A stretch of 64,000 nt of DNA from IMG/VR virus record IMGVR_UViG_3300036770_007539, positions 186,001 through 250,000 of that record, one strand, 5' to 3'. The position numbers were made by a program, and so were the translations under genes. Below, in pieces: positions 2 through 55,920 of the stretch. The stretch's first letter is position 1. The number at the start of each line of letters is the position of its first letter. The notes beneath the pieces are model-generated. The model made no database searches and was not told the origin of the DNA. It saw only the letters and a program-made list of their open reading frames with translations.

Positions 2-1489
2 GAAAGAACGGGCAATGATACTTTTTCAAGAAAGCAGTTTATTCCCAGCTTTAGTTTAATTTCTAATACTGAATTAACGGATCTTCAAGTTACAACAGAT
101 CCTTTGGTGGTTGGAGCTGCTAAAGATGTCAACCCTAAAAAAAATCCAGTTTTGCTTAAAAACCAAAGTGTAATTGGTCTTGCTAAATCAAATATATTTT
201 GTATTTTGAATCCAGACCCAGATTTAATTACCAATAATTTGGTTGGATCTGTTTTAACTCCTAACCTTTTGTCTAGTAGTAAATTTAAAATTGTTAAAGT
301 TGATTTATGTACAGATGGGTATGGCGATGTAAATGGCGACGGTCAGATCGATTTGTCAGATGTTACTCTTGCGTCTTCTTTAATTGGCGAAAGTATATAT
401 TATCCTGTTACTCAGCAAAAAATTGTTGATGGATACATTAATACATTTGATCTGTTAAGGGCGGACGTGGATGGTGACGGATATATCACTACTAATGATA
501 TTGATTTACTAACTCAATACGTAAATAAATCAATTAATTCATTTCCTGCAGGCACATCATTTAATCATCTATGCCTTGAGCTTCAGCCATTAGTTGGGAG
601 ATACGATGGATACTTTGACTGCGGAGATGGATATGTAAGGGTAGATGGCTCCTCTTCTAATATAATTTCATCTAGTTTACTTAGTGAGTATGAGCTTTTA
701 TATGATGGATATTACATTCCATCTAATCTGGAATTAGATCCTGTATTTTCTACCGTTCCATTTGCAGGAGTTAATTATCAAATTGCTCCTAAGCCATTTT
801 GGCAAGATTGGCAAATAAACTTATCTTCTGATGCAAGACTAGTTCCGGCAGCGTTTACATATCTTGAAAGTTCGGAAACTTTTTCTTGTACTGAGACTGT
901 TGATACGGTGTGCGATTCTCAATATCAAGAAGCTCCAACAATAGACACTGGAAGAAATGACTTTTTTATTCCAAATAATTTATTAATTGGTAATGGTCAA
1001 ATTTTGAATGTTGATGGGTCGCATTTTAAACAAGACTTTGAAATTGCAACTATTGAGCTTAGACTTCCAGAAATTCCTTTAAATGAATCAAAAATTAATA
1101 TTTTTGAAAAATTTGTAGTGGACGTAGGCAGTGGTAAAACAGCTTCTGGATATCCGGCTATGAAATATTCTGATTGCTCAACAGTTCAAATAGAAGATTT
1201 GTTTTTAAATAAAGTTAAATTCAATGTTGCAGTTCAAGCCTTCTATAAAAACTTGGATGGATATGACGCAGATTTAGATGGGTATGTTGTCATTGAAGAT
1301 CCTACGATTGGCGTCCTAATAGATCATTCTACTGGCATTCTTACTTTAAATGCCAGCGATCTTGCCGAAGATACGGTCTTCAAATCATTAGTAACAAAGA
1401 TTTCAGTAACAGTATACTTAAAGAAGGCAGGGTGGAATAATAGACATCTTATTGTGACTTCGAATGAGATACAGGGATTACTCTCATAA
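2..1489 (+). CDS. Putative virion structural protein with dockerin-like (paired EF/F-hand) domain; 5'-truncated by window edge
   Basis: Frame is open from nt 2. Motifs GDVNGDGQIDLSDV and ADVDGDGYITTNDIDLL match the two Ca-binding repeats of type I dockerins; 8 DGY tripeptides. Confidence 0.6.
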   Translation, partial: ERTGNDTFSRKQFIPSFSLISNTELTDLQVTTDPLVVGAAKDVNPKKNPVLLKNQSVIGLAKSNIFCILNPDPDLITNNLVGSVLTPNLLSSSKFKIVKVDLCTDGYGDVNGDGQIDLSDVTLASSLIGESIYYPVTQQKIVDGYINTFDLLRADVDGDGYITTNDIDLLTQYVNKSINSFPAGTSFNHLCLELQPLVGRYDGYFDCGDGYVRVDGSSSNIISSSLLSEYELLYDGYYIPSNLELDPVFSTVPFAGVNYQIAPKPFWQDWQINLSSDARLVPAAFTYLESSETFSCTETVDTVCDSQYQEAPTIDTGRNDFFIPNNLLIGNGQILNVDGSHFKQDFEIATIELRLPEIPLNESKINIFEKFVVDVGSGKTASGYPAMKYSDCSTVQIEDLFLNKVKFNVAVQAFYKNLDGYDADLDGYVVIEDPTIGVLIDHSTGILTLNASDLAEDTVFKSLVTKISVTVYLKKAGWNNRHLIVTSNEIQGLLS

Positions 1490-1510: not shown

Positions 1511-2605
1511 ATGCGAGTTAAAGTACAAGGATTTTTATTTGGTAAGTCTCATAGCTGGGCATATGTTAATCAAAATTTAGGCAGATCCTTGCTTAAATTG
1601 GGGCATGATGTAGAGTTCGTTTCCACAGATGGCAATGACCCCAAGCATACCCCAAATGATTTAAAACCGTTTATTAAATCATTTGGAATTGGCAATTATG
1701 ATATGCAAATATCTTATACTGCTATGATTAATTTTCCTCAATATTTATCTTCTGGAGATAAAAATAGATTTGGAATATGGTGCTATGAATTTCCAATTAT
1801 TCCAAAAGACTTTATTAAATATTATAAAAGCTGCGATAAAATTCTAGCTCCCAGTAATTTTGCCAAAGATATTTTTATTAATAATAAAGTTCCAGGAGAT
1901 AGTGTTGTAGTCGTTCCTCATGGTATTGATTTAGATGCATTTAATAATAAAAATAAATTTAAATTAAAAACCAATAAAAAAATAAAATTTTTAATTCCAT
2001 TAGGTCAGCCTCATATCAGAAAAGCAATCCCTGAAACCATTGAATCGTTCTATAAAGCATTTACAAATAAAGATGATGTTTGTTTGGTTGCAAAAATACC
2101 AAGTTCTTCTAAAGAAGAGTCCAAGCCTTTCGAGGTTGATGTTAAAAAAATAATTAATAAATTAAATGAAAAATATAGACAGCATCCAGAAATAGAATTA
2201 ATTACTGATTATGTTCCTGATATGGTTTCTTTATTTAATGCTTGCGATGTAGTATATTCATTGACACATGCTGAATGTTTTTTCATGCCAGCACTTGAGG
2301 GTTTTGCTGCTAACAAGTTGGTTGTTGTTCCAGGTCATGGTGGTCAATTAGATTTTTGCAATAATGAAAATAGCTTGCTGATTTCTGGAAAAGAAGTTAG
2401 GGCTCCAATGGAAGCTCAGTATTGGTCCCCATCTCCATTTAATTCTTATTTTGAAGCAAATCAAGAGCACGCAGTAGAAGCATTAAGAAGTGTTTACCGC
2501 TCTTATGATTCTATTTTAGAATCTAAAAAAGAATCTATGAAAAATACGGTTCAAAATTATACTTGGGATAATGCTATTAATTTAATCTTGAAAGAAGTTG
2601 TTTGA
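1511..2605 (+). CDS. Glycosyltransferase family 4 (GT-B)
   Basis: VVPHGID, RKAI, ECFFMPALEG (EGFGLPxLEA-like) motifs. Confidence 0.9.
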   Translation: MRVKVQGFLFGKSHSWAYVNQNLGRSLLKLGHDVEFVSTDGNDPKHTPNDLKPFIKSFGIGNYDMQISYTAMINFPQYLSSGDKNRFGIWCYEFPIIPKDFIKYYKSCDKILAPSNFAKDIFINNKVPGDSVVVVPHGIDLDAFNNKNKFKLKTNKKIKFLIPLGQPHIRKAIPETIESFYKAFTNKDDVCLVAKIPSSSKEESKPFEVDVKKIINKLNEKYRQHPEIELITDYVPDMVSLFNACDVVYSLTHAECFFMPALEGFAANKLVVVPGHGGQLDFCNNENSLLISGKEVRAPMEAQYWSPSPFNSYFEANQEHAVEALRSVYRSYDSILESKKESMKNTVQNYTWDNAINLILKEVV

Positions 2606-3288
2606 TGTTGGTAAGTATTATAATACCTGTATTTAATCAAGTTTCTTTTACTCAGAAATGTATAAAAGACTTATTACAATTAAAAGTAGAAAATGAAATT
2701 ATAGTTATTGATAATAATAGCACAGATGGAACTGATTCTTTTTTTTCAAGTTTAAGCAGTAAAAATTTAAAATATTTAAAATTAAACAGTAATGTTGGAT
2801 TTGGAGCAGCTAATAATATAGGCGTGGAAAATTCTTCTGGTAAAAATTTATTATTTTTAAATAATGATGTTTGTGTTTTAAAAGATAAAGACAGTTGGAT
2901 TGATCCATTATTAAATCTTTGCCAAGATAGATTGTTGTCTTCTCAGTCAGGGTTGTTAGATTTTAATTTTAATTTTGTTAAAGAAGTATCTGACCCTCAT
3001 GTTTTAAAAAATTCTTTTGAGTATTTAAGTGGTTGGTCTTTGTTGGGATCTAGGGAGTTATTTAATCAAATCTCTCAAGAGGAAGGCGTGATATGGTCAA
3101 AAAAATATTTTGCATATTTTGAAGATGCTCATCTTAGCTGGAAGGCAAGAGATTTAAAAATACCAATGGAAGTAGTTAAAACTCCACTTCATCATTTTGG
3201 AAGAATTACTTCGAGTAAAATGGGTCTATCTAAAATGTATCAAGATTCTTATAAGATTTTTTCTAATTATTGGAAAAGTAAAAAATGA
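2602..3288 (+). CDS. Glycosyltransferase family 2
   Basis: VSIIIPVFN, IDNNSTDGT, GFGAANN, LNND, YFED. Confidence 0.9.
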   Translation: MMLVSIIIPVFNQVSFTQKCIKDLLQLKVENEIIVIDNNSTDGTDSFFSSLSSKNLKYLKLNSNVGFGAANNIGVENSSGKNLLFLNNDVCVLKDKDSWIDPLLNLCQDRLLSSQSGLLDFNFNFVKEVSDPHVLKNSFEYLSGWSLLGSRELFNQISQEEGVIWSKKYFAYFEDAHLSWKARDLKIPMEVVKTPLHHFGRITSSKMGLSKMYQDSYKIFSNYWKSKK

Positions 3289-4094
3289 AATTGCACATAT
3301 TAACTTTAACATGGAATGGCTCTTTTCTATTACAAAGATTAGCTCCAGGACTATTAAACAATGTAAAACATGCAAATATTGATTATCATTGGTATGTCCG
3401 CAGTAATGGATGCAAAGATGATTCTATTGATTATCTAAATTCTTTAGAAGAAAAAATTTCTATCTTAAAAAAAGATCATAATAGAGAAAATTTTTCTCAA
3501 GGAGTAAATTCTCTAGCAAATTTAGCCAGAGACAACATTTCAGATGGAGACCTGTTTTTGTTATTAAACAATGACATCTCTTTTAAAGATCCTTTTTCAT
3601 TAAAAAATGTTATTGATTTATATTTAAAATATAATCCTGGAATAGTAGGAGCTAAGTTAAATTATACGAATTCAAATAAGCTTCAACATGCTGGGGTTAT
3701 TTTTTCTACTAAGTATGGCAACATGCCTTGGCATTTTCGAGCAGGCGAAGAAGAGGATGAAGAATCTAAAAAGAATAGATATTTTCAAGCTGTTACTGCT
3801 GCTTTTATGATAACTCCATGCAAATTATTTTTTGAAGCGGGCATGCTGGATGAAAAATTCAATTGGGCATTTGAAGATATTGCTTATAACTTAAAAATTT
3901 CTAATATGGGTCATAAAATAATTTATTGTGGTAATACTCATATAGATCATGGAGAGTCAGTTTCTTTAAAAAAGAATCCAGTAAATAAACTCATGATAGA
4001 CTCAAATGTAAAACATTTTAAAAATAATTATGGGAATCTTTATAAGATAGATCATGATTTGTATTTGAATAATAAAAATTATGGACTAATATGA
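3285..4094 (+). CDS. Glycosyltransferase family 2
   Basis: LLLNND, LQHAGV, AVTAAF, FED, HGES motifs. Confidence 0.88.
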   Translation: MKLHILTLTWNGSFLLQRLAPGLLNNVKHANIDYHWYVRSNGCKDDSIDYLNSLEEKISILKKDHNRENFSQGVNSLANLARDNISDGDLFLLLNNDISFKDPFSLKNVIDLYLKYNPGIVGAKLNYTNSNKLQHAGVIFSTKYGNMPWHFRAGEEEDEESKKNRYFQAVTAAFMITPCKLFFEAGMLDEKFNWAFEDIAYNLKISNMGHKIIYCGNTHIDHGESVSLKKNPVNKLMIDSNVKHFKNNYGNLYKIDHDLYLNNKNYGLI

Positions 4095-5068
4095 AAACTT
4101 TATGCTTGCCCTACTGCCCTGGTATTCCTTGGAATATTAATGACCAAGAAGTTATTGTTAGGAAATTAAATGGAGACCCGCAAGCACTGTTAACAAAAGA
4201 TTTAAATATCGTATGTCATGGTGGCTTACTAGAATCTTTTATTTCAACATTTGCTATAGAATATTTAAAATATAAACATCCATATAAAAAAATTATTTGG
4301 CACGGGAGTCAAGAATTTAAGCACGTAATTGATTATCAAGGAATAGCTACTTATTCAAATGAAATTACTTCTGAAGTGGCTAATTCTTATCCTATACATT
4401 TCTTTAAAGACAAAGAGAACAATACTTATTTTAATTTATTAGATAATTATTTGGATTATCATACTTATCTTGGGAAAAAGATTAAAAAAAATAAAATGAA
4501 CTTCATTGATACTTTTAACAAGAATTTTATGTTGGAAAATTTAATGAAGCATAAACTGCAGTGTAGAAATAAGCCAGAAGATTTAGAATTTATATCTTGG
4601 TGTAATTTAAATAAAAACATATTAAATAAGCCCTATGTTGTCATTCTCCCAGACAGACTGACTACATCTATGCATCATCTAGATTTTATGAATTTTTCTA
4701 TGATGGAATTAAGAGGACTTACATCAGTATTGAATTCTAAGGGGATTCAAGTTATTATTATGTCTAACGATCCCTCTAAGTATTATGGAAATTTTAAGTT
4801 TATAAAATATTCTTTTGCAAGGTTTTTATCTTTGGCAGTAAATTCTAAGATTGTTTTGTCAAGACAGCCCGACTTTTCATTAATAGCATTAATGATTTCT
4901 AGAGCAAATGTATATTCTTATATGATTCGACACATGCCAAAAATCAAATTAAAGCCATCTATTCGAAGAATAAAAGGCAGAATAGATCCAGATTGGAAGT
5001 ATCTAAAGAGACAAAATACTATTCCTTTATTAATAGAAGACATTACTAGGAGAATTTATGAGCGCTAA
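4091..5068 (+). CDS. Hypothetical protein, possibly divergent GT9/heptosyltransferase-like fold
   Basis: Weak resemblance (HGGLLES, KYKHP, PYVVILP) and position in a GT operon. Confidence 0.35.
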   Translation: MKTLCLPYCPGIPWNINDQEVIVRKLNGDPQALLTKDLNIVCHGGLLESFISTFAIEYLKYKHPYKKIIWHGSQEFKHVIDYQGIATYSNEITSEVANSYPIHFFKDKENNTYFNLLDNYLDYHTYLGKKIKKNKMNFIDTFNKNFMLENLMKHKLQCRNKPEDLEFISWCNLNKNILNKPYVVILPDRLTTSMHHLDFMNFSMMELRGLTSVLNSKGIQVIIMSNDPSKYYGNFKFIKYSFARFLSLAVNSKIVLSRQPDFSLIALMISRANVYSYMIRHMPKIKLKPSIRRIKGRIDPDWKYLKRQNTIPLLIEDITRRIYER

Positions 5069-5837
5069 ATTATTAATGGTAACTTATAATAGGTTGGAAT
5101 TAACCAAGAAAACTTTAGATAATATTTTCAAAGTTACTAACTTTCCATTTGAATTGGTTATTGTTGACAATGCTTCTTCTGATGAAACGGTATCATACTT
5201 AAAAGAAATTCTTCCTAATAAATCTTTGAATGATAATTATATTGGAGCCAAGTTATTATGCAACTCAAATAACTTGGGAATAGCCATAGGTAGAAATCAG
5301 ACAATGCTATTAGCTGGTAATTCTGATTGGTACGCAACCCTAGATAATGACGTTCTCCTCCCAGAAGGATGGCTAAAAAAATGCATAGATATAATGACTT
5401 TAAATGCTAAGTATGGTATGATTGGAGTTAATTTTGAAAGCGTTAAGTATCCATTAGTAGATGTTGGACCATATAAAGTTCAGCACAAGAAAGAGGGAAA
5501 CTTAGGAACTGCTTGCATGGTTTTTTCTAAAAAAGTTCATAAAATGATTGGATTCTTTAATGATAAAGATTATGGAAAGTATGGGCTAGAGGATAGTGAT
5601 TATGGATTTAGGACAAGAGTTGCAGGGTTTCAATTGGGATATTTGGAAGATGAAGGTGTTCATTTAGGAGAAGATTCGGCAGATAAAGGCGAATATAGAA
5701 AGTTTAAAACTGAAGAACATAATAAATATTTGCAAAAATTTTATGGTAACTGTAAATTATATTATAATAACTCAAAACCCATCTATTTAAAAATAGACAA
5801 AGAAAAATATCAATTAGATAATATTTTAGAGTTTTAA
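5058..5837 (+). CDS. Glycosyltransferase family 2
   Basis: VTYNR, VDNASSDET, GIAIGRN, LDND, GLEDSDY. Confidence 0.9.
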   Translation: MSAKLLMVTYNRLELTKKTLDNIFKVTNFPFELVIVDNASSDETVSYLKEILPNKSLNDNYIGAKLLCNSNNLGIAIGRNQTMLLAGNSDWYATLDNDVLLPEGWLKKCIDIMTLNAKYGMIGVNFESVKYPLVDVGPYKVQHKKEGNLGTACMVFSKKVHKMIGFFNDKDYGKYGLEDSDYGFRTRVAGFQLGYLEDEGVHLGEDSADKGEYRKFKTEEHNKYLQKFYGNCKLYYNNSKPIYLKIDKEKYQLDNILEF

Positions 5838-8527
5838 TGATATCTGAATATTTTTATGAAGATTTGAAATTCGTATGTGCCTCTGCCGTATCTTGTAAAT
5901 ATAATAAAGAATATATATTAGAGCCTAGATACGGCAAGGTTAATTTCAATTTTATTGAAAAATTTACTTATATAAATTTATTCTTTAAAAGAATTTCTGG
6001 AAATGGAAAAATATTAATTAATAATGTTCCATATGTTATTTCTTCTAAAAGTTCTGATGTGAAAAGCATTTCAGCCAATGATGGCAATATTTTTATATCC
6101 AGACCCATTGATTCTATTGGCGAAGTGGCAATTTTTGGTATAGAACTATATTTGCAAGAAGGAAGTGATATAATGAATTGGAAGTCTTTAGTTAAGAAGT
6201 TGTCTGATTATCGTGGGCTATCATTAATAAATAATGAATTGCTGGCAAAAGAAAATGCTTATATTAGCCCAGCCAGCAGAGTAACTGATATTGTGACTTT
6301 GCCAGAAAATGTTTCGGTTGTTAAAGATGATAAAATTTATTTTAAATATCCTTGTAAAATTTTGCAACTAACATTACAGGATGATCAAGCTTCTAATTCA
6401 AATATTAATATTTTTCCGCCAAGAGAATCTCCAAGTCCTTCAGTTATAAACTTTAATAAAACTGATGATTTAACTTTAAATAGTCAGCAAAACAATATTC
6501 AAGTTATGAATTTTAAATCAACAAACAATCAAAATAATAAAGAAAAAGATCAAATTCTTCGCATCGTTTATGACTCATCGGCTAGTGGTGTAATTAATTC
6601 AAATACTATTAAAAATAATGAAAAATTATTAAAGTTCTCTCATGTTAATGAGAAGAATTATATTTTTATTAAAGCAGGGGGAACGCTGACCCTTCCCTTA
6701 TCGAGCATTGATCATGGAAAAAAATATATTTTAATAATTAATGCCAAGAAGGTTAGTGGTAACGGAAAGGCTCAGATAACTACTTCTTTAGATCAGCATT
6801 TTGATTTTGTTGTATCTAATTCATTTCAAGATAAAAATTTTAATTTTAGTTCTTTTAATTTATCTAAAGAGTATGACATATTTAAATTATCAATTTCTAT
6901 GCCTAATACTTCTTTCGGAGAAATTGTTATTTCTAGAATCATGATTTTAGAAGACTTTAATCAGGACAACCTAACTCTTTTAAATAGCGCTCACAGCCCT
7001 GGCAAGCAAACATATGCTCTTCAAAACAGTTCATATAATAAATTAAATAAAAATAAAAAATTTGTTATTGTTATTCCTAGTTATAAAAATCAAGAATGGG
7101 CAGAGAAAAACATTTTATCGGCATTAAATCAAAATTATTCAGATTTTAGAGTTCTTTTTACTGATGATTGCTCTCCTGATAATACTTTTGATGTTGTAAA
7201 AAAAGCTGCAGAAAATCATCCAAATAAAAATAAATCTGTTATTGTAAAAAATGAAGTTCGTAAAGGGGCTTTAGAAAATCTCTATAATATGATTCATTCC
7301 TGTGATGACGATGAAATTATATTAACATTGGACGGTGATGACTGGCTAGCAAGTCCAGAAGTATTAAATATTTTAAATAGTCATTATTCTGATGATATAT
7401 GGATGACTTATGGTCAGTATCAAAATTATCCAGATGGAGGAAGGGGAATTGCCCAACTAATACCAGACCAAGTTATAAAAAATAAAACTTATAGAAGCCA
7501 TACTTGGTGTTCTTCTCACTTAAGAACTTTTTATGCTTGGCTATTTAAAGAAATTAAAAAAGAAGATTTATTTTATGAAGGCAGGTTTATGGCAATGACC
7601 TGGGACATGGCTATGATGTTTCCAATGTTAGAAATGTCTGGTCACAGATCTAGATTTATAAGCGATTATTTATACATATATAATTTAGTAAATCCAATCA
7701 ACGATCATAAAGTTAATCAAAAATTACAACAAAAGCTAGATAGGCTGGTTAGAAACATGCCTAAATATTCTCTTCTCAACAGAGAGCCATCGCATGTATT
7801 GGAGAACAGAATTAAAAATAAAAATAAAATAGGATTATTAATAATTGCAACCGGCAAGTACGACCAATTTATTTCTCAATTAGTTGAATCTGCTGACAAG
7901 TATTATTTTAATGATTCAAGATTTGATGTAACGTATTTTATTTTTACTGATAAGCAAGTTTCATTAAATACTTTAAGAAATTATAAAGTAATTAATATAC
8001 AGCATCGAGGATTCCCCTATGCTAGTATGGACAGGTTCAAACATTTTACAAATAATTCTGAAGAATTATCTAAAATGGATTATTTATATTATGTAGACGT
8101 TGATTGTAAGTTTGTAGATCACGTCTCTGCTGAGACCTTGGGAGAATTAGTTGGGGTTCGTCATTGTGGTTATTTTAATGGCGGTGGCACGTTTGAAGAA
8201 AATAAAAATTCTGTATTTTATGAAAATCCCCAAAAATATAAATATTATTTTGGAGGAGGATTCAGCGGAGGAAAAGCCTCTTCTTATTTAGAATTGTCAA
8301 AATGGTGTTATGAAATGATAGAAAGAGATTTATCAAATAATATAATTCCAACCTGGCATGATGAAACAGCTTTAAATAGATACTTCTTAGATCACGAGCC
8401 TGAAATTGTATTAACTCCCAGCTATCACTATCCAGAAAATTATTCAAATTATATTGCAAAATGGAGACCCCATAAATTTACTCCTAAAATTATGCTCTTA
8501 GAAAAAAATCATAAGGAAGTAAGATGA
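5837..8527 (+). CDS. Multidomain glycosyltransferase: duplicated N-terminal beta-rich domain + GT2 + GT6 (ABO-type alpha-1,3-Gal/GalNAc transferase)
   Basis: GT2 part: IVIPSY, DDCSPD, LDGDDW. GT6 part: IGLLIIATGKY, YFIFTD, DVD, YYFGGGFSGG, WHDETALNRYF, LTPSY, LEKNH. Confidence 0.88.
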   Translation: MISEYFYEDLKFVCASAVSCKYNKEYILEPRYGKVNFNFIEKFTYINLFFKRISGNGKILINNVPYVISSKSSDVKSISANDGNIFISRPIDSIGEVAIFGIELYLQEGSDIMNWKSLVKKLSDYRGLSLINNELLAKENAYISPASRVTDIVTLPENVSVVKDDKIYFKYPCKILQLTLQDDQASNSNINIFPPRESPSPSVINFNKTDDLTLNSQQNNIQVMNFKSTNNQNNKEKDQILRIVYDSSASGVINSNTIKNNEKLLKFSHVNEKNYIFIKAGGTLTLPLSSIDHGKKYILIINAKKVSGNGKAQITTSLDQHFDFVVSNSFQDKNFNFSSFNLSKEYDIFKLSISMPNTSFGEIVISRIMILEDFNQDNLTLLNSAHSPGKQTYALQNSSYNKLNKNKKFVIVIPSYKNQEWAEKNILSALNQNYSDFRVLFTDDCSPDNTFDVVKKAAENHPNKNKSVIVKNEVRKGALENLYNMIHSCDDDEIILTLDGDDWLASPEVLNILNSHYSDDIWMTYGQYQNYPDGGRGIAQLIPDQVIKNKTYRSHTWCSSHLRTFYAWLFKEIKKEDLFYEGRFMAMTWDMAMMFPMLEMSGHRSRFISDYLYIYNLVNPINDHKVNQKLQQKLDRLVRNMPKYSLLNREPSHVLENRIKNKNKIGLLIIATGKYDQFISQLVESADKYYFNDSRFDVTYFIFTDKQVSLNTLRNYKVINIQHRGFPYASMDRFKHFTNNSEELSKMDYLYYVDVDCKFVDHVSAETLGELVGVRHCGYFNGGGTFEENKNSVFYENPQKYKYYFGGGFSGGKASSYLELSKWCYEMIERDLSNNIIPTWHDETALNRYFLDHEPEIVLTPSYHYPENYSNYIAKWRPHKFTPKIMLLEKNHKEVR

Positions 8528-9243
8528 TTACTTTCAGTCAGCTTGGTCAGTGGGGAAGACTAGGCAATCAATTATTTGAAGTAGCAACTACTGTCGGATT
8601 AGCCTTAAGAGTTAAAGAATCTTATGGATTTCCTGAATGGGAATATTCAAAGCATTGTAACTTACAGAACTGTTATTATGATAATTTAAAAATTACAAAC
8701 ATATATCATGAACCATTTTTTCATTATAAAAAAATAGACAATAAAAATAATAACTTAGATCTAAGAGGGTATTTTCAAAGCTACAAGTATTTTGATGATT
8801 ATAAATATTTTATTTTAGATGCTTTAGTTCCCAATTTAAATTTAAATCCAGAATCTGATTTATGTGGGATTCATGTTAGAAAGGGAGATTATATAAATTT
8901 AAAAGATTGCTATCAACAACTAGACATGAATTATTATAATCAAGCTATAGAAGAAATAAAATCTGATAGATATATTATATTCTCAGATGACATTGAATGG
9001 TGTAAAAAAAATTTTATTGGTGATAAATTTCAATTTTCTCAGGGCAGAGAGCCACATGAAGATTTAGCAATTATGGCAAAACAGTGTGATAATATGATTA
9101 TTGCAAATTCTTCGTTTTCATGGTGGGGAGCTTATTTAAATACAAATTTTAACAAAAAAATTATTGCGCCTAAAAAATGGTTTGGTCCAAAATTACCGCA
9201 TGATACCAGTGATTTATTGCCAAAAGAATGGATTGTTATATGA
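8524..9243 (+). CDS. Alpha-1,2-fucosyltransferase (GT11)
   Basis: GRLGNQLF, GYFQS, HVRKGDY, FSDD, ANSSFSWWGAYL are the GT11 signatures. Confidence 0.93.
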   Translation: MITFSQLGQWGRLGNQLFEVATTVGLALRVKESYGFPEWEYSKHCNLQNCYYDNLKITNIYHEPFFHYKKIDNKNNNLDLRGYFQSYKYFDDYKYFILDALVPNLNLNPESDLCGIHVRKGDYINLKDCYQQLDMNYYNQAIEEIKSDRYIIFSDDIEWCKKNFIGDKFQFSQGREPHEDLAIMAKQCDNMIIANSSFSWWGAYLNTNFNKKIIAPKKWFGPKLPHDTSDLLPKEWIVI

Positions 9244-10202
9244 TAAACTTGCACGTTTTAAAGTATGAGTCGCAAAATTTAGGCGATGATATTCAGAGTG
9301 TAGCTGTTATGGATATTTTAAATGACCTTAATATAAAATATTCATTGGTATCTCGCGACTCACTAGATAAATATCCATTTAGTGAAAATGAAAAAAATTA
9401 TGTCATTTTAAATGGGTGGTTTACTAATGGTTATGGCGTGGATGAATATTACTCTGTTCCAAGGGAATTTAGAGCAAATAAACATGTAAATTTACCGCCT
9501 AAAGGTAATTTTTTGCCAATCATTTATTCTTTTCATATTTCTGAGTGGGGTCCCTTTTATGACCGTGAAGTTCATCCAAGCTTTTTAAGCGAAGAGAGTG
9601 CAAATTTCTATAGAAAATCATTATCTGTAGGTTGCAGGGACGTGCATACATTAGAATTAATGAAAAAAATTAATGTAGATACTTCTTATTTTTCCGGATG
9701 CATCACTCTTTCTTTAAATAAAGAAAAATATTATTTAAAAAATAATCAAGATGATTATATATTATTTGTAGACGTTCCAAAGGAACATGAAAATGTTTTA
9801 GAGCAAAAGACTAAAGAGGTTTTTAAAGATTTAGAAATTATAAAGATGACTCATAATTTAGACTCGTCTTTTACTGATGAAAATTCAAGATTTGATAAAG
9901 CAAAATTACATTTAAAAAAATTCTGTAATGCAAAACTCGTAATTACAACAAGGCTTCATGTCTTTTTGCCCTGCTTAGCTTTTGGAGCGCCTGTAATATT
10001 TGTATTTGACGATGAAGAATTAAATAATTCCAGAGTTAGAGATTATATTAAAATGGTTAATACCATACCTTTTAGTCAGATAAAATCTATTAATTTAAAC
10101 GATTATTTAAAAAATAAATATGATGGAGAGATGTCAGTAAAAATTACAAACAAATTCAAAGAAATAATCAATGAGGTTATTAATGATACATCAGACGCAT
10201 AA
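9240..10202 (+). CDS. Polysaccharide pyruvyl transferase family protein
   Basis: NLGDDIQS, VGCRD, TTRLH; ATG at 9240 overlaps the upstream stop (ATGA). Confidence 0.82.
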   Translation: MINLHVLKYESQNLGDDIQSVAVMDILNDLNIKYSLVSRDSLDKYPFSENEKNYVILNGWFTNGYGVDEYYSVPREFRANKHVNLPPKGNFLPIIYSFHISEWGPFYDREVHPSFLSEESANFYRKSLSVGCRDVHTLELMKKINVDTSYFSGCITLSLNKEKYYLKNNQDDYILFVDVPKEHENVLEQKTKEVFKDLEIIKMTHNLDSSFTDENSRFDKAKLHLKKFCNAKLVITTRLHVFLPCLAFGAPVIFVFDDEELNNSRVRDYIKMVNTIPFSQIKSINLNDYLKNKYDGEMSVKITNKFKEIINEVINDTSDA

Positions 10203-10746
10203 TACTACTAAGATGGATAGGTATCCTAAAATTTTTAATTTTTTATCTGAAAATTATCAAGACTCATTAAAAATTCTATCTTTTGGCTGCTCTTCGGGAG
10301 AAGAATGCTTCTCTTTGAGAAAATACTTTTTAAAATCTAAAATATTTGGGGTAGATGCTAATGATGAAATATTAAAAGAAGCCATTAAAAATAATAATGA
10401 CAATAATATTTATTTTGACAACAGCATAATGAACATTGAATCTGTTGATATGATTTTTGCAATGTCGGTATTTTGTAAGCATCCAGAATCATTTGATTTA
10501 TTAAAAAATACTGTTTATAATTTTAAAGATTATAATGAAGAAGTTAAAAAGCTAGATAGTAAATTAAATAAAAATGGTATTTTTATAAACTATAATTCAA
10601 ATTATTTTTTTTCAGATACCGACGTTTATTATAAATATTCTCCGATTTTGGGAGATTTTGAAAAGGAATTTGTTAAAAAATTTGATAAAAATAAAAATTA
10701 TTCAAATTTAGAATCACCCGTCATTTTTATAAAAAATAAAGTTTGA
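10171..10746 (+). CDS. Class I SAM-dependent methyltransferase (CheR-like motif I)
   Basis: ILSFGCSSGEE, FGVD. Confidence 0.75.
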   Translation: MRLLMIHQTHNTTKMDRYPKIFNFLSENYQDSLKILSFGCSSGEECFSLRKYFLKSKIFGVDANDEILKEAIKNNNDNNIYFDNSIMNIESVDMIFAMSVFCKHPESFDLLKNTVYNFKDYNEEVKKLDSKLNKNGIFINYNSNYFFSDTDVYYKYSPILGDFEKEFVKKFDKNKNYSNLESPVIFIKNKV

Positions 10747-10771
10747 TATAGGTAAATTTTATTGGAGACAT

Positions 10772-11698
10772 ATGAAGCCTGAAAAAATTATTTTATGGGG
10801 ATACCCTCTTCACTCTCATACACATTCTTACATTCATTATGCTTTTAAGCGAGCCTTTGATTATTTGGGATGTGAAACTTATTGGTTTACTGACAAAGAT
10901 GATGTTTCTGGATTTAATTTTAATAACTGTTTATTTATTACTGGCGGAGATCAAGAACAAAATATTCCTTTAAATAAAAGCAGTCGCTATGTGATTCATA
11001 ATGTAAATGCAAAAAAATATTTAGACCAAAATTGTAAGATATTTTTAATACAGACTCATACTAAAGATGCTCCACTAGATACAAATCCTAATTCTCATAG
11101 AATTAATCCTTGGAGTCTATTACATACGGATAATGATATAAAATGTTTATATATGGCATGGGCAACGGACTTACTGCCAAATGAAATTAATTTAAACAAT
11201 GCAACGAATCAAAATCATAATAGAGAATGTGTTTGGGTCGGGACTTCTGGGGGCGGCAATTCTAAATTTGAAAATGGAAGTGCTCTCTATCCTTATTTTG
11301 AAGAATGTAAAAAAAACAATATTATTGTAAATAATATTGATCCCTGGGCTACTCCTGTCTCGCCAGAAAAAAATTTATTATTAGTTAAAAATTCATTTGT
11401 ATCCCCATCGATACAAGGACCTTGGCAAGTAGAGAGCCAATACATTCCCTGCAGAATATTTAAAAATATTTCTTATGGTCATTTTGGAATTACTAATAAT
11501 TCTTATGTGAATCGTATTTTTAATAATCAATTAATATATGATTCTAATTCTACTACGCTGTTCTATAAATCATTGGAGGCTAAGCAAAGCTCCGGGGCAG
11601 TTGATTATATAAAATCTTTAATGCAAGAAGTTAAAAATAATCATACATACATAAATAGAATACAAGTTTTATTTGATTGCATGGGGCTTGAATTATGA
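10772..11698 (+). CDS. Putative glycosyltransferase-like protein (GT-B C-terminal-like motifs)
   Basis: YIPCRIFKNISYG and HTYINRI resemble CgeB/GT1_2-type motifs; GGAG RBS. Confidence 0.5.
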   Translation: MKPEKIILWGYPLHSHTHSYIHYAFKRAFDYLGCETYWFTDKDDVSGFNFNNCLFITGGDQEQNIPLNKSSRYVIHNVNAKKYLDQNCKIFLIQTHTKDAPLDTNPNSHRINPWSLLHTDNDIKCLYMAWATDLLPNEINLNNATNQNHNRECVWVGTSGGGNSKFENGSALYPYFEECKKNNIIVNNIDPWATPVSPEKNLLLVKNSFVSPSIQGPWQVESQYIPCRIFKNISYGHFGITNNSYVNRIFNNQLIYDSNSTTLFYKSLEAKQSSGAVDYIKSLMQEVKNNHTYINRIQVLFDCMGLEL

Positions 11699-12666
11699 AC
11701 GTTTTACATGTTACGTTCCATCAGGGCTGTAAAATAAATCTAGATTATGTTGCTCAAAGTTTAGGTTTTAATCTTACAACTCAAAGAGCTGATTGGAATT
11801 ATAACATAGGCTCAAATAGAGCAAATGAAATTTGGAATAAGTATAAAGACTATTATAATTCATTTGATGCAATAGTTACATCTGACACAGCTCCGCTATC
11901 AAGAATATTTTTACAAAATAATTATAGTAAAAAATTAATTGTATGGGTTTGTAATAGATTCGATTATTGTGATATGTCAACAAATGACTGTGCTTTTCCA
12001 GACCAATCATATTATCAATTAATAAGAGATTCAATAAATAAAAATAATGTAAAATTTTTTTCTTATACTAAATTTGAGCATGAATACGCTCAAAAATATA
12101 GAGGTATAAACTGGGGCAATGAAACAATTAAACCATGCGCATTTTATGATGACACTCCTCCAGTTAATTTTGCTTTAAGTGGAATTGATAAAGAATCTAC
12201 ATTTTTTATTCCCCCATATCATAATGATACTATTTTTATGAATTTAAAATCTAAATGCGATCAGTTAGGGATAAGAGCTTATGCTGGGAGATACAATGGT
12301 CCATTAGATTTAATGAATATTAAAGGAATTATTCACATACCATATGCTTGGTCTAATTTGGCTCTATTTGAAAATTGGTCAATGGGAAATGTTTATTTTG
12401 TTCCTTCTAAAGATTTTCTAATTAATTTAGCACATCAAAATAATTTTTTCTGGAGCCCGCCTTTTCCATTGGACCATATCGAATCGTCCGAATGGTACCT
12501 CCCAGAGCATAAAGATCTTTTTATTTATTTTAATGATTGGAATCATTTAAAAACTTTAAGTAATGATAACGATTTAATAAATTCAAAAAAAACGAAAGTT
12601 TTAAATTATAGCAAAATTCACACGAATGAAATGTTAAATAAATGGAAAAAAGCACTTGACCTATAA
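11695..12666 (+). CDS. Hypothetical protein in glycan locus (possible glycosyltransferase)
   Basis: ORF with ATGA overlap; HIPYAWSNLALFE resembles a GT-B C-terminal motif. Confidence 0.45.
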   Translation: MNVLHVTFHQGCKINLDYVAQSLGFNLTTQRADWNYNIGSNRANEIWNKYKDYYNSFDAIVTSDTAPLSRIFLQNNYSKKLIVWVCNRFDYCDMSTNDCAFPDQSYYQLIRDSINKNNVKFFSYTKFEHEYAQKYRGINWGNETIKPCAFYDDTPPVNFALSGIDKESTFFIPPYHNDTIFMNLKSKCDQLGIRAYAGRYNGPLDLMNIKGIIHIPYAWSNLALFENWSMGNVYFVPSKDFLINLAHQNNFFWSPPFPLDHIESSEWYLPEHKDLFIYFNDWNHLKTLSNDNDLINSKKTKVLNYSKIHTNEMLNKWKKALDL

Positions 12667-12674
12667 GGAATAAA

Positions 12675-13889
12675 ATGATTCAAGGATTTTATACTGGATG
12701 TATAAATTCAGGAAATATTGGAGACGATGTTTTATTTAATATTTTTTTAAATTTATTAAGCGAATGCATTGTTGATAAATATAAAGTTAATTGCTCAATA
12801 GATCAAAATCAATTATTTCTAAAAGATTCTTCTAAAGAATGGATGGAAAACTCTTCTATTGGTGTAGTTGGAGGAGGGTCAATTCTTCATCCAGAAGAAA
12901 TTTCTTATTCAGGTCCTATTAAAAACTATGAATCAAATATTAAAGCATCTTTATTATTTGGAACTGGAATATCAGATACGCCAAATTTTAAAATATCAGA
13001 AAGTGATAAGTTAAATATATTGTCCGGAAAGTATTTAAATTTAAATTTTCCAATAAATAAAATGATGAGTGAAAACATTTTAATTGCTAAAAATATAAAA
13101 TTTGGCGGGCTACGAGGACCATTAGACGTGGCTGTATGTAGAAGTTTTGATGAAACTTTTCGTAAGCCATGGATTTATGATCCGGGACTGTTATTTAATA
13201 GATATTATAATTTAAATTCTTTAAAAAATAAAAATTCTAATATTATTGGAATAAATATTGCCAACATATCTGGAGATAATAGAATTTCATTAAAAAATGA
13301 AAAATACATTGATTATATGAACAGGTTGGAGTCTGTTATTGTAGATGTATGTAATTTTTTAATTAATAAAAATTATAAAATATATTTTTACTCAATGTCC
13401 GATGGTGAAATGCATTTGCATAATACTATTATTAATAAACTGGATAAGAATTTAATAGGATCAAATATATTAACTCACAATAAACCTTTAAATTATGTTG
13501 AATTGGCTTTGTTATCTTCTACTTTTAAATTCGCCATAGCAACTAGACTGCACGCCAATATTTTATTAAATTCTAATTTAATTCCTACCATAAATTTAAT
13601 GTATAATATTAAAGCAAGTAATTATATGAAAAGTATAGAAATGCTTGAACTGGGGGTTCCAACAGATTCTAATATGAATTTAAATAATATAATTAATAAA
13701 TATAATTTTTTAATGCAAAATTACGATAATATTATTAAAACATTAAAGTTTAATGTTGAAAAAGCGTATACGTTGCACTATGATGAAATAATGAAATTAT
13801 TAGATGGTATTAATTTAAAAATAGAAAATGATGTAAATATACAATATCAGATATATAATAGTATATTAGGTTTTTTTAAAATTAATTAA
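12675..13889 (+). CDS. Polysaccharide pyruvyl transferase family protein
   Basis: GNIGDD, VGGGS, LRGP, DPG, TRLHANI. Confidence 0.82.
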   Translation: MIQGFYTGCINSGNIGDDVLFNIFLNLLSECIVDKYKVNCSIDQNQLFLKDSSKEWMENSSIGVVGGGSILHPEEISYSGPIKNYESNIKASLLFGTGISDTPNFKISESDKLNILSGKYLNLNFPINKMMSENILIAKNIKFGGLRGPLDVAVCRSFDETFRKPWIYDPGLLFNRYYNLNSLKNKNSNIIGINIANISGDNRISLKNEKYIDYMNRLESVIVDVCNFLINKNYKIYFYSMSDGEMHLHNTIINKLDKNLIGSNILTHNKPLNYVELALLSSTFKFAIATRLHANILLNSNLIPTINLMYNIKASNYMKSIEMLELGVPTDSNMNLNNIINKYNFLMQNYDNIIKTLKFNVEKAYTLHYDEIMKLLDGINLKIENDVNIQYQIYNSILGFFKIN

Positions 13890-13898
13890 AGGCAAAAA

Positions 13899-14531
13899 AT
13901 GAAAGAGTATAGTTTTGAAGGCGCACAAGATTGGCATCATTATTTTAAAATTATTTTTGATAATTTCAAAGTAAGAAATATGTTAGAGTTTGGTCTTGGC
14001 AATGGTACTGAATTTTTATTAGATCATTGTAACACCGTTACTTCTGTTGAAATTTCATTGGGCGATTATAACAAATCCTGGTATTCTATGTGTTTAAAAA
14101 AATATTCTCATTATAATAATTGGAATCCAATATATATTGAAGCTTGTGATGAAATTAGAGAAGCTAATGAAATCGCTCAAAAGAATAGATATCCGATATC
14201 ATATAATAAACATTTATCTAAATTAGAAGAAATTACAGATCTTGTTTTATCAGATCATGAATATGATGCTATTTTTGTTGATGCTGGAATTCATAATAGA
14301 GGCGATATTTTAAATTTAGTAATGGGCAAAGCTCCTATAATTGCAGCACATGATTCCTCTAGGGATGAAAATAGAATACTTAAAAATATATACGGATACA
14401 ATATTGTTCGAGTTCCGAGTGATTATTTAGAATTTCATTTTGAAGATACGTATATGGGTACTACGATTTGGGTTAAAAAAGATTTTAACAGCAATGTTAT
14501 TAGTTCTTTGTCAGGAAGATTAAACAAATGA
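13899..14531 (+). CDS. SAM-dependent methyltransferase
   Basis: MLEFGLGNGT, VTSVE, YDAIFVDA, AHD. Confidence 0.75.
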   Translation: MKEYSFEGAQDWHHYFKIIFDNFKVRNMLEFGLGNGTEFLLDHCNTVTSVEISLGDYNKSWYSMCLKKYSHYNNWNPIYIEACDEIREANEIAQKNRYPISYNKHLSKLEEITDLVLSDHEYDAIFVDAGIHNRGDILNLVMGKAPIIAAHDSSRDENRILKNIYGYNIVRVPSDYLEFHFEDTYMGTTIWVKKDFNSNVISSLSGRLNK

Positions 14532-15223: not shown

Positions 15224-15224
15224 A

Positions 15225-16133: not shown

Positions 16134-16138
16134 AAATT

Positions 16139-50592: not shown

Positions 50593-50597
50593 AAGAC

Positions 50598-51410: not shown

Positions 51411-51424
51411 AAGGTCCTCATAAT

Positions 51425-51463
51425 AAAAAACTCCTGAAAAAAGTTTCCTTCTTTCAAGAGTTT
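51425..51463 (-). terminator. Intrinsic terminator with GAAA tetraloop
   Basis: Minus strand aaactcttgaaagaag-gaaa-cttttttcaggagtttttt; two G-U pairs form only on the minus strand. Confidence 0.8.
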
Positions 51464-51493
51464 GTTAGATAATTATATTTCAAATTATGCAAA

Positions 51494-52324: not shown

Positions 52325-52325
52325 C

Positions 52326-54907: not shown

Positions 54908-54928
54908 GTCATTATGTTTTATTATTGA

Positions 54929-55654: not shown

Positions 55655-55667
55655 ATTTTTCTCAATC

Positions 55668-55919: not shown

Positions 55920-55920
55920 T

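What the first reader, a model, noticed from the sequence alone, without database searches (positions are those of the whole stretch)
2..1489. Recurrent DGY tripeptide in structural-type proteins: possible sequon or metal-binding micro-motif
Seen: DGY occurs 8 times in this 461+ aa protein, twice in the 120-aa ORF at 53775-54137, twice in the 1309-aa Gly-rich protein, and once right after a poly-Gly linker in the last ORF (~63827-63835). The flanks are unrelated, so this is not tandem duplication. Inference: a selected short linear motif, for example a modification site (the gene abuts the GT cluster and a kinase-like gene abuts the 120-aa DGY protein), a protease site or a Ca-binding turn.
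Basis: partly seen in the sequence, partly recalled or inferred. Interest (0 to 1): 0.6.

Follow-up and report, generated by a model that had tools for sequence, protein, structure and literature searches.

The report
Recurrent DGY motif in phage tail proteins
The tripeptide Asp-Gly-Tyr really is several-fold over-represented, conserved and repeatedly re-invented in the tail, baseplate and fibre proteins of a large group of uncultivated jumbo phages, which points to a selected surface motif (possibly a sugar-attachment site) whose function is still unknown.

Summary
The window lies in a 301-kb jumbo-myophage record. ORF 2..1489 is the C-terminal half of a 973-aa baseplate-associated protein and carries 8 DGY (expected 0.13).

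- Genome-wide, DGY occurs 56 times against 13.5 expected. It ranks second of 7,570 tripeptides.
- 53 of the 56 lie in genome 128-268 kb, mostly in tail, baseplate and fibre genes. The head module has none.
- The signal is at protein level: codons follow background usage and flanks are unrelated.
- Relatives at about 50% identity show 8-9-fold enrichment. T4, S-RIM12 and phiKZ show none.
- Between such relatives DGY is retained 59% of the time, against 11% for average tripeptides.
- Its Tyr is rarely replaced by Phe.
- Most sites modelled lie in loops.
- It can expand into arrays of 1-7 copies in one loop.
- It replaced other residues at homologous loops of the sheath insertion domain and the dockerin. 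The folds therefore do not need it.

Only 2 of 56 sites are classic Ca loops. The two DGY in the 120-aa ORF are not conserved. Those in the 1309-aa and last ORFs are at chance level. No kinase was found.

My best guess (about 0.3) is a Tyr O-glycosylation or recognition site served by the soluble glycosyltransferase cluster that always follows the baseplate genes. This is unproven.

The parts
2..1489 (+). C-terminal 495 aa of a 973-aa baseplate-associated protein (P0005). It has 8 DGY, at window 314, 428, 476, 605, 626, 704, 1256 and 1277.
   Evidence: The family has more than 440 homologues of about 975 aa, and all 8 sites are conserved in 32-50 of 50 aligned. Residues 183-414 resemble a phi812 baseplate chain (Z 13.3). 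The gene follows a gp6-like wedge gene and a 2225-aa protein.
320..526 (+). Type I dockerin module inside that protein. DGY637 lies in its second Ca-binding loop. DGY583 and DGY621 lie at its start and between its helices.
   Evidence: Pfam PF00404 scores 35.5 bits against a cut-off of 22.9. The structural match to dockerins has Z 10.6 and rmsd 1.8. The PDB sequence search gives the same answer.
605..634 (+). Double DGY element DGYFDCGDGY (P0005 680-689). It is highly conserved but falls in a low-confidence loop of the model.
   Evidence: pLDDT below 50 at 686-698.
1256..1285 (+). Double DGY element DGYDADLDGY (P0005 897-906). This is the oldest pair. It is kept even in the weakly enriched lineage G012-G014.
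1511..18096 (+). Soluble glycan-synthesis cluster directly downstream. It holds GT4, three GT2, a GT2+GT6 fusion, GT11, two pyruvyl transferases, a methyltransferase, GDP-mannose 4,6-dehydratase and two epimerase/reductases. It is the candidate modifying machinery by inference only.
   Evidence: No predicted membrane protein. The same position is occupied in relatives.
32582..36511 (+). 1309-aa Gly-rich protein with 2 DGY (33164, 36197). This is chance level on its own.
   Evidence: 2 against 0.61 expected, p 0.12. No Pfam or PHROG match.
53775..54137 (-). 120-aa ORF with 2 DGY (54000, 54027). They are not conserved, and the gene context is non-structural. Probably not part of the phenomenon.
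62384..64000 (-). Virion structural protein (phrog_1645), 593 aa in full. It has one DGY after a poly-Gly stretch (63827-63835).

Best explanation
DGY is a real three-residue motif kept by selection in the tail apparatus of a broad group of uncultivated jumbo myophages. It occurs in the sheath insertion domain, the peripheral baseplate proteins and the fibre-like proteins.

It behaves as an autonomous unit. An Asp-Gly tight turn places a tyrosine hydroxyl in a loop. The unit does not depend on the fold that carries it, and it can be multiplied in place.

I think each DGY is most likely a recognition or acceptor site for a phage-encoded modification. The leading candidate is O-glycosylation of the Tyr by the all-soluble glycosyltransferase cluster that follows the baseplate genes in every relative examined. 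The result would be a sugar-coated tail.

Shown:
- enrichment at protein level;
- restriction to tail genes;
- conservation together with turnover;
- preference for Tyr over Phe;
- location in loops;
- independence from the fold;
- repeated conversion of loops to DGY;
- amplification into arrays;
- synteny with the glycosyltransferase cluster.

Inferred, not shown:
- solvent exposure of the Tyr;
- that any modification occurs;
- which enzyme does it;
- that the glycan cluster acts on proteins at all.
For: 1. Statistics.
- 56 observed against 13.5 expected genome-wide, rank 2 of 7,570 tripeptides.
- 53 against 8.1 in genome 128-268 kb; 3 against 5.7 elsewhere.
- None in the head module: TerL, portal, protease-bearing protein and seven large neighbours.

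2. Protein level.
- Codons follow background usage, and out-of-frame matches equal the permuted controls.

3. Breadth.
- Relatives' virion modules show 47 against 5.4 and 41 against 4.8. DGY is the top tripeptide by far, z 16-18 against about 7 for the next.
- Whole-record pattern against reversed control: 34/4, 19/3, 50/8, 66/11, 170/42, 71/14, 70/6.
- T4 19/15, S-RIM12 19/33, phiKZ 53/40.

4. Selection on the tripeptide itself.
- Retained 37 of 63 times between roughly 50%-identical orthologues, against 10.7% for all tripeptides and 22% for other DGx. There are also 22 gains.
- The sites are invariant islands within variable flanks.

5. Hydroxyl preference.
- DGY 6.6x, DGT 3.1x, DGS 1.4x, DGF 1.2x, DGV 1.0x, DGI 0.7x, DGW 0; EGY is depleted.
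- Tyr to Phe occurs at 1.5% of cells in DGY columns, against 11.8% at other conserved Tyr columns.

6. The fold does not need it.
- In the homologous sheath insertion domain, outgroups have RD(A/S)(Y/F)G, PI(A/S)GTAKF and LDANGN where this clade has RDGYG, IDGYAKF and LDGYGN.
- The dockerin of lineage G012-G014 has none of the three DGY.

7. Units act additively.
- One loop of a LamG-like domain in the 2225-aa neighbour holds 1-7 DGY across 120 homologues.
- The units use different synonymous codons and different spacers.
- An orthologous single site is (DGY)4 in a relative.

8. Structural context.
- In the two AlphaFold2 models, 9 of 10 sites are in coil. Four lie in conserved but low-confidence loops.
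- The sheath sites lie in the non-core insertion domain.

9. Candidate machinery.
- At least six GT domains plus GDP-fucose synthesis, with no membrane protein, lie on the same strand directly after the DGY-richest genes.
- That position is conserved in every relative checked.

10. Precedents.
- Tyr-linked glycans exist in bacterial S-layer proteins (PMC2943079).
- Virion glycosylation is reported for mycobacteriophages (as cited in PMC12619734).
Against: - No direct evidence of any modification.
- I know of no precedent for a D-G-Y sequon or for Tyr glycosylation in a phage. A literature search for 'DGY motif' found nothing.
- The co-occurrence test could not discriminate. Lineage G012-G016 is only weakly enriched: whole-genome ratio about 1, tail module 15 against 3.8. 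Yet it also has a large GT cluster (GT4-type) at the same position. All enriched lineages are related, so the association amounts to roughly one evolutionary event.
- Phage GT clusters may instead act on host envelope glycans or on DNA.
- Some DGY sit in well-ordered, highly conserved segments (sheath 172-185, dockerin), as a structural element would.
- A shield-type glycosylation might be expected on the head too, but the head module has no DGY.
- No model coordinates were available, so exposure of the Tyr was not measured.
Confidence: 0.3

Rival explanations
1. Intrinsic structural or assembly staple. DGY is an Asx-Gly turn whose Tyr hydroxyl makes a fixed hydrogen bond within the chain or across a subunit interface, comparable to a tyrosine corner or an Asp-box. 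It stabilises the loops of long-lived extracellular tail proteins, and no outside partner is involved.
For: - The residue before the motif is hydrophobic in 50% of sites, against 35% background, and most sites are at strand-loop junctions.
- Asp cannot be replaced by Glu, and Tyr is rarely replaced by Phe, as in tyrosine corners.
- The sheath sites lie in a confident, conserved segment.
- The C-terminal double DGY of P0005 is kept in all lineages.
- Conserved loops that the monomer model cannot place could be subunit interfaces.
Against: - The same folds exist without DGY in related lineages.
- Val, Ile, Phe and Trp after DG are not enriched, so this is not a generic strand-start preference.
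- T4, S-RIM12 and phiKZ show no enrichment although they have similar kinds of proteins.
- Arrays of 2-7 selected units in one loop, and (DGY)3-4 tandems, do not fit a single staple.
- The structural contexts differ: helix-loop-helix, strand ends and long loops.
Confidence: 0.25
2. Multivalent adhesion loops. Tyr, Asp and Gly-rich loops, as in antibody binding sites and sugar-binding sites, give the tail many weak contacts with host surface polysaccharide or other glycans.
For: - The motif is restricted to the tail.
- The largest array sits in a loop of a concanavalin/LamG-like lectin fold in a baseplate protein, and its copy number varies between relatives.
- DGY proteins include a collagen plus LamG fibre.
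- Tyr is preferred over Phe, as in binding sites.
Against: - A tripeptide cannot form a binding site alone.
- Many sites are strictly conserved over wide divergence, unlike receptor-binding loops.
- Sites occur in the sheath and in a dockerin, which are not usual receptor binders.
- No binding data exist.
Confidence: 0.2
3. Calcium or other metal-binding micro-motif. The Asp residues of DGY, especially in the paired element DGY-x(2-4)-DGY with a third acidic residue between, hold Ca2+ and stiffen loops in Ca-rich water.
For: - DGY637 lies in a true dockerin Ca loop, DVDGDGY.
- Paired elements recur: sheath RRDGYGNPIDGY, P0005 DGYFDCGDGY and DGYDADLDGY, and elements in relatives. They often have acidic residues at i, i+4 and i+7.
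- The conserved loops are modelled with low confidence when no ions are present.
Against: - Only 2 of 56 DGY have the [DN]x[DN]xDG context.
- 41 of 56 are isolated.
- Tyr is not a Ca ligand, yet it is the most specific position.
- The dockerin of the related lineage keeps its Ca-loop pattern without DGY.
Confidence: 0.1
4. Protease processing site for virion maturation.
For: Three paralogues have DGY at residue 14 and two have it at residue 41, near their N termini. A head-maturation-protease domain is encoded at genome 109797-114398.
Against: - There is no DGY in the head module, where such proteases act.
- Sites lie inside folded sheath and dockerin domains.
- Tandem arrays make no sense as cleavage sites.
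Confidence: 0.03
5. Artefact of composition, DNA-level bias, paralogy or tandem duplication.
For: One seven-copy tandem array and two paralogue groups inflate the raw count slightly.
Against: - About 47 independent sites against 13.5 expected, p about 1e-12.
- Isolated sites alone give 41 against 13.5.
- Within-protein shuffles reach at most 22.
- Codon choice follows background, and off-frame counts equal the controls.
Confidence: 0.01

Closest known systems
Bacterial glycosylation sequons: Campylobacter PglB D/E-X-N-X-S/T, and Bacteroidota O-glycosylation D-(S/T)-(A/I/L/V/M/T) (from my own knowledge of the field)
   Same: A very short motif with an obligatory acidic residue one or two places before a hydroxyl- or amide-bearing acceptor. 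It is scattered over many unrelated surface proteins, gained and lost in evolution, and linked to a dedicated glycosyltransferase locus.
   Different: The acceptor here would be Tyr, preceded by Gly. Glu does not substitute for Asp. The machinery has no membrane or oligosaccharyltransferase component, so transfer would happen in the cytoplasm. No glycan has been shown.
Tyrosine O-glycosylation of S-layer proteins (Paenibacillus alvei, Thermoanaerobacter; review PMC2943079)
   Same: Tyr-linked glycans on self-assembling surface proteins of prokaryotes, at several sites per protein.
   Different: Those glycans are built on a lipid carrier and transferred outside the membrane by an O-oligosaccharyltransferase. 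That review gives no DGY consensus. They are cellular, not viral.
Virion glycosylation in mycobacteriophages (Freeman et al. 2023, as cited in PMC12619734) and in chloroviruses (my own knowledge)
   Same: Virus-encoded glycosyltransferases next to structural genes decorate virion proteins inside the cell.
   Different: In mycobacteriophages the glycans sit at the C termini of capsid and tail-tube subunits, not on a dispersed tripeptide. Here the head module lacks the motif.
Asp-box (S-x-D-x-G-x-T-W) and tyrosine corner (my own knowledge)
   Same: Short turn motifs with Asp/Gly and an aromatic or hydroxyl residue that recur in unrelated folds with unrelated flanks. Tyr in such corners resists replacement by Phe.
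   Different: Pattern searches found no Asp-box and only 3 L-x-P-G-x-Y in the genome. Those motifs are not lineage-specific, do not form tandem arrays, and are needed by their folds. Here related folds do without DGY.
His-x-His metal sites of T4 long and short tail fibres (my own knowledge)
   Different: HxH sits on the threefold axis of trimeric fibres and binds Fe or Zn. DGY occurs in monomeric domains such as the sheath insertion and the dockerin, and its key residue, Tyr, is not a typical Ca ligand.
Dockerin / EF-hand DxDxDG calcium loop (Pfam PF00404)
   Same: One DGY (P0005 637-639) is the end of such a loop. The domain is a true dockerin by sequence and by fold.
   Different: It accounts for about 2 of 56 sites. 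No cohesin partner was found in the record.

Membership tests
Type I dockerin (PF00404), for residues 585-653 of P0005 | Profile match above the curated cut-off, covering both duplicated Ca-loop plus helix segments | tested here: met
   35.5 bits against 22.9, profile positions 1-57 of 57.
Type I dockerin (PF00404) | Dockerin fold | tested here: met
   Model residues 582-663 superpose on solved dockerins with Z 10.6/10.2, rmsd 1.8-2.2 and 29-35% identity.
Type I dockerin (PF00404) | A cohesin partner encoded by the same system | tested here: not met
   No PF00963 match in the 301-kb record at E 0.1. The record is about 71% complete, and the partner could be unrelated in sequence.
EF-hand-like DxDxDG Ca loop, as a general explanation of DGY | Acidic or amide residues at positions -4 and -2 before the DG | tested here: not met
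   Only 2 of 56 DGY match [DN]x[DN]xDGY.
Glycosylation sequon | Short motif enriched in surface proteins beyond composition, with unrelated flanks | tested here: met
Glycosylation sequon | Acceptor residue with a hydroxyl is required | tested here: inconclusive
   Tyr far exceeds Phe, and DGT is the second most enriched DGx. This is compatible but does not prove it.
Glycosylation sequon | Cognate transferase present and co-distributed with the motif | tested here: inconclusive
   The GT cluster is adjacent in all lineages, including the weakly enriched one. No motif-free relative was available as a control.
Glycosylation sequon | Glycan attached at the motif | not testable with these tools
   Needs mass spectrometry or glycan staining of virions.
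Tyrosine corner | Gly at Y-2 (classically L-x-P-G-x-Y), with Tyr at the edge of a Greek-key strand | tested here: not met
   Here Gly is at Y-1 and Asp at Y-2. Only 3 L-x-P-G-x-Y occur in the genome. The contexts include helix-loop-helix.
Asp-box | S-x-D-x-G-x-T-W hairpin | tested here: not met
   0 matches in the genome.
Contractile tail sheath, for the DGY-bearing ORF at genome 155954-158386 | Sheath core fold and C-terminal domain | tested here: met
   Z 32.5 to the phi812 sheath with 318 aligned residues. PF17482 and phrog_2839 match.
Tandem or paralogous duplication as the source of the repeats | Similarity of the flanks between sites | tested here: not met
   With DGY masked, only 2 paralogue groups link sites. 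One local array in the neighbour gene is the exception.

The most novel reading that the evidence does not exclude
D-G-Y is the acceptor sequon of a previously unknown, virus-encoded, cytoplasmic tyrosine O-glycosylation system. The system coats the tail (sheath, baseplate, fibres) of a widespread group of environmental jumbo phages with fucose-containing, pyruvylated glycans made by the adjacent GT2/GT4/GT6/GT11 cluster. The number of sites is tuned by gain, loss and tandem expansion of the tripeptide.
Probability: 0.25. Interest if true: 0.9.

Novelty: new variant of a known kind. Interest (0 to 1): 0.66.

Why it matters
Short motifs selected across many unrelated proteins usually mark a shared partner, such as an enzyme, an ion or a receptor. 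Here the signal is unusually clean:
- one tripeptide, 6-9-fold enriched;
- restricted to tail proteins;
- conserved, yet repeatedly re-created in loops whose folds do not need it;
- shared by hundreds of uncultivated jumbo-phage genomes.

If it is a glycosylation site, it would give phage glycobiology its first predictive sequon, and glycoengineering a compact tag for Tyr-linked glycans. It would also explain why these phages keep a large sugar-synthesis cluster inside their tail operon.

If it is instead an adhesion or structural unit, it is a new building rule for tail surfaces. In either case the proposal is directly testable on virions or on co-expressed proteins.

Tried and rejected
- DNA-level cause (methylation or recombination site, codon bias): rejected. 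DGY codons mirror background usage and off-frame counts equal the permuted controls.
- Composition artefact: rejected by per-protein expectation, a Markov-1 model and within-protein shuffles.
- Paralogy or duplication: only 2 paralogue groups and 1 array.
- General property of phage structural proteins: rejected for T4, S-RIM12 and phiKZ. Phage G shows a mild 2.2x excess that I did not follow up.
- An extended consensus around DGY: none beyond a weak hydrophobic -1 and a small or acidic +1.
- Kinase, GT8 (glycogenin-like) and sulfotransferase searches in the record: nothing.
- Cohesin partner for the dockerin: none.
- T4-type major capsid protein search: uninformative, because the controls did not ring either. 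The 366-aa candidate turned out to be a cysteine desulfurase, so the capsid gene remains unidentified.
- Co-occurrence of DGY richness with GT clusters. GT2 counts looked promising: 4-8 in rich lineages against 0-1 in weak ones. But the weak lineage has 6-11 GT4-type genes at the same place, and its tail module is still 3.9x enriched. The test does not discriminate.
- ESM Atlas look-up of the C-terminal part: no usable hit.
- Literature: 'DGY motif' gave 0 papers and 'Asp-Gly-Tyr' gave nothing relevant. Two papers on Tyr glycosylation and on phage virion glycosylation were not held.
- Whether the phage belongs to the 'moraphage' or ERM lineages (PMC12619734) could not be checked.
- Solvent accessibility could not be computed, because model coordinates are not exposed.
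- No reads tools were used.
Full report
**What the locus is.** The window is bases 186001-250000 of a 301,007-bp IMG/VR virus record. The record has 35% G+C and CheckV rates it 71% complete. ORF 2..1489 is the last 495 residues of a 973-aa ORF, P0005. Upstream lie a gp6-like baseplate wedge gene (phrog_6) and a 2225-aa protein, P0006, that has LamG-type domains. Downstream lies a glycan-synthesis cluster.

An AlphaFold2 model of P0005 (pLDDT 78) shows two recognisable parts:
- a beta-sandwich at residues 183-414 that resembles a phi812 baseplate chain (Z 13.3, 151 residues aligned);
- a true type I dockerin at residues 582-663 (Z 10.6, rmsd 1.8; Pfam 35.5 bits against a cut-off of 22.9).

The phage is a jumbo myophage. 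It has a tail sheath (Z 32.5 to the phi812 sheath), a tubulin-like gene, UvsW and DnaB. More than 440 homologues of P0005 and about 690 of the sheath exist in environmental contigs of up to 459 kb.

**Checking the observation.** The first ORF has 8 against 0.13 expected (p about 2e-12). The 120-aa ORF has 2 against 0.04. The 1309-aa and last ORFs are at chance level on their own.

I called 373 crude ORFs (94,186 aa) in the whole record. Results for DGY:
- It occurs 56 times against 13.5 expected from composition, or 19.1 under a first-order Markov model.
- It ranks second of 7,570 tripeptides, beside the collagen-type triplets and GGG.
- Within-protein shuffles give a mean of 13.0, sd 3.5 and a maximum of 22.
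- Codon choice inside DGY follows background usage. Out-of-frame GAYGGNTAY matches (16) equal the permuted controls (16-34). The signal is therefore in the protein, not in the DNA.
- With DGY masked, flank similarity links only two paralogue groups. About 47 sites remain independent.
- Isolated sites alone number 41 against 13.5 expected.

**Where the motif sits.** Fifty-three of the 56 sites lie in genome 128-268 kb (53 against 8.1 expected). The rest of the genome has 3 against 5.7. The carriers include:
- the tail sheath;
- P0005 and P0006;
- proteins of 1749, 1186 and 537 aa upstream of the sheath;
- a collagen plus LamG fibre and its paralogue;
- several 'virion structural' proteins.

The head module at 97-128 kb has no DGY at all. 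It comprises the large terminase, the portal, a protein with a head-protease domain, and seven further large ORFs.

The 120-aa ORF is different. It sits among genes for an NTP-transferase, UvdE, an exonuclease, NUDIX, Fpg and lysis enzymes. Its orthologue at 45% identity has TGQ and AGS at the two sites. I regard that pair as coincidental. No kinase was found next to it or anywhere in the record.

**Breadth.** The evidence from relatives is as follows.
- Two relatives at roughly 50% identity have 47 against 5.4 and 41 against 4.8 in their virion modules. DGY is by far the most over-represented tripeptide there, with z 17.9 and 16.4 against about 7 for the next.
- Whole-record counts of the coding pattern against its reversed control are 34/4, 19/3, 50/8 and 66/11 in close relatives. 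In further lineages found through sheath homologues they are 170/42, 71/14, 97/33, 122/43 and 70/6.
- T4 (19/15), cyanophage S-RIM12 (19/33) and phiKZ (53/40) show nothing. Phage G shows a mild excess, 58/26.
- A third related lineage (G012-G016) has whole-genome ratios near 1. Its tail module alone still has 15 against 3.8.
- Distant sheath homologues from the 50%-cluster library remain enriched, at 43/4.5, 23/2.6 and 46/6.8. The sites are at other positions, in the insertion domains.

**Signs of selection on the tripeptide itself.**
- In 50 P0005 homologues (54-81% identity) all eight sites are kept in 32-50 sequences. Often they are invariant islands within variable flanks. Two further common DGY columns exist, and one of them has been lost here (DGS at 693-695).
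- Between this genome and the roughly 50% relatives, DGY is retained at 37 of 63 aligned sites (59%). The figure is 10.7% for all tripeptides and 22% for other DGx. Relatives also have 22 DGY where this genome has none, so there is turnover as well.
- Tyr in DGY columns is replaced by Phe in 1.5% of cells. At other Tyr-majority columns of the same alignment the figure is 11.8%.
- Among DGx triplets only Y (6.6x) and T (3.1x) stand out. S is 1.4x, F 1.2x, V 1.0x, I 0.7x and W is absent. EGY is depleted.
- There is no wider consensus around the motif.

**The folds do not need DGY.** The three sheath sites (RRDGYG, PIDGYAKF, LDGYGN; the third is DSF in this genome) lie in a confidently modelled insertion domain outside the conserved sheath core. 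Homologous domains of outgroup sheaths, at 44-60% identity, read RD(A/S)(Y/F)G, PI(A/S)GTAKF and LDANGN at those places. A few other lineages have DGY at one or two of them independently.

The dockerin tells the same story. The dockerin of the G012-G014 homologue keeps its calcium-loop pattern but has none of the three DGY. Only the C-terminal pair (897/904 here) is shared by all lineages. Loops were therefore converted to DGY several times within existing folds.

**Arrays.** P0006 carries PDGYVDGYADGYVDGYDGYSDGYYPLDGYVPGY in a loop of a second LamG-like domain. Across 120 homologues that loop holds 1-7 DGY, most often 2 or 4, and this genome has the maximum. The units use different synonymous codons and different spacers, so each unit is kept at the amino-acid level. 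A single DGY in the 1749-aa protein corresponds to (DGY)4 in one relative. Another relative has (DGY)3 elsewhere in the same protein. Paired elements of the form DGY-x(2-4)-DGY-[VA]-x-hydrophobic recur in several proteins.

**Structural context.** In the two models, 9 of 10 sites are in coil. Two pairs in P0005 (680/687 and 897/904) lie in loops that are highly conserved yet modelled with pLDDT below 50. That pattern is typical of segments ordered by a partner, an ion or a neighbouring subunit.

**The neighbouring glycan cluster.** Window 1511-18096 encodes:
- GT4;
- three GT2;
- a GT2+GT6 fusion;
- GT11;
- two pyruvyl transferases;
- a methyltransferase;
- GDP-mannose 4,6-dehydratase;
- two epimerase/reductases, which complete a GDP-fucose route.

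None of its products has a predicted membrane span. The order sheath-initiator, gp6-like, 2225-aa protein, dockerin protein, GT cluster is kept in every relative examined.

I tried to use this as a test. GT2 genes number 4-8 in strongly enriched lineages and 0-1 in the weak lineage. However, the weak lineage has 6-11 GT4-type genes at the same position, and its tail is still enriched. The association holds everywhere I looked but has no negative control. It amounts to about one evolutionary event.

**Interpretation.** Six properties must be explained together:
- autonomy from the fold;
- loop location;
- a requirement for Asp rather than Glu, and for Tyr rather than Phe;
- additive arrays;
- restriction to the tail;
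- restriction to one lineage.

Together they fit a short linear motif read by a shared partner better than a purely internal structural role.

I rank the readings as follows.
- Tyr O-glycosylation or another modification served by the adjacent cluster comes first, at about 0.3. Precedents are Tyr-linked S-layer glycans (PMC2943079) and mycobacteriophage virion glycosylation (cited in PMC12619734). I also draw an analogy, from my own knowledge, with the acidic residue that other bacterial sequons require.
- An internal or inter-subunit staple, about 0.25.
- Multivalent adhesion loops, about 0.2.
- Calcium binding, about 0.1. This is shown only for the dockerin loop, and only 2 of 56 sites have the DxDxDG context.
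- A protease site, about 0.03.
- An artefact, below 0.01.

None of these is proven. The decisive experiments are mass spectrometry and structures of virions or of co-expressed proteins.

**Verdict.** The finding is real, statistically very strong, much wider than the window, and not described in the literature I could search. Its function is open.

Noticed in passing
window 1511-18096: An all-soluble glycan cluster. It combines a GT6 domain fused to GT2 (5837-8527), GT11 (8524-9243) and a GDP-fucose synthesis route, which is chemistry like that of histo-blood-group antigens. It also has two pyruvyl transferases and a methyltransferase, and it sits inside a phage tail operon. Its target (virion, host envelope or DNA) is unknown.
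   Followed up: partly
window 18691-20010: A tubulin/TubZ-like gene (PF00091 plus the TubZ C-terminal domain), as in phages that position their DNA with a tubulin spindle.
   Followed up: no
window 320-526: A true type I dockerin module embedded in a phage baseplate protein and conserved in hundreds of homologues. No cohesin is detectable in the record, so its partner is unknown.
   Followed up: partly
genome 138471-139571 (L002:10471-11568): A cysteine desulfurase of IscS/NifS type (E 7e-20). It also matches the SspA protein of a DNA phosphorothioation system, and it sits among tail and virion genes.
   Followed up: no
genome 262702-266928 (L006:14702-18928, minus strand): Two paralogous fibre proteins with long collagen-type G-x-Q repeats plus a LamG domain. 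They make PQG, GPQ and QGP the other top over-represented tripeptides of the genome.
   Followed up: no
window 32582-36511: A 1309-aa protein with 18% Gly and recurring GGD/GGN/SGG-type segments. It has no Pfam or PHROG match. It may be a beta-helical fibre or an injected protein.
   Followed up: no
L010:13114-13860, L010:15752-16798, L022:12925-13485 and the ENA contig: Relatives carry an Acb1-like/2',5'-RNA-ligase-fold gene between the dockerin gene and the GT cluster. They also carry HNH, GIY-YIG or LAGLIDADG homing-endonuclease genes there. This genome has none of them at that place.
   Followed up: no
G005 (IMGVR_UViG_3300009537_002640) 1-12 kb, minus strand: About 60 DGY codon triplets at regular spacings. 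This suggests a giant repeat protein in which every repeat carries the motif.
   Followed up: no
window 49873-57766, minus strand: A block of DNA-repair and nucleotide genes (UvdE, 5'-3' exonuclease, NUDIX, Fpg, sugar-nucleotidyl transferase) next to two cell-wall hydrolases (glucosaminidase, amidase).
   Followed up: no
Bacillus phage G (NC_023719), about 324-345 kb: A mild DGY excess (58 against 26 for the reversed control), with a local cluster of hits. The motif may be used, more weakly, outside the clade studied here.
   Followed up: no
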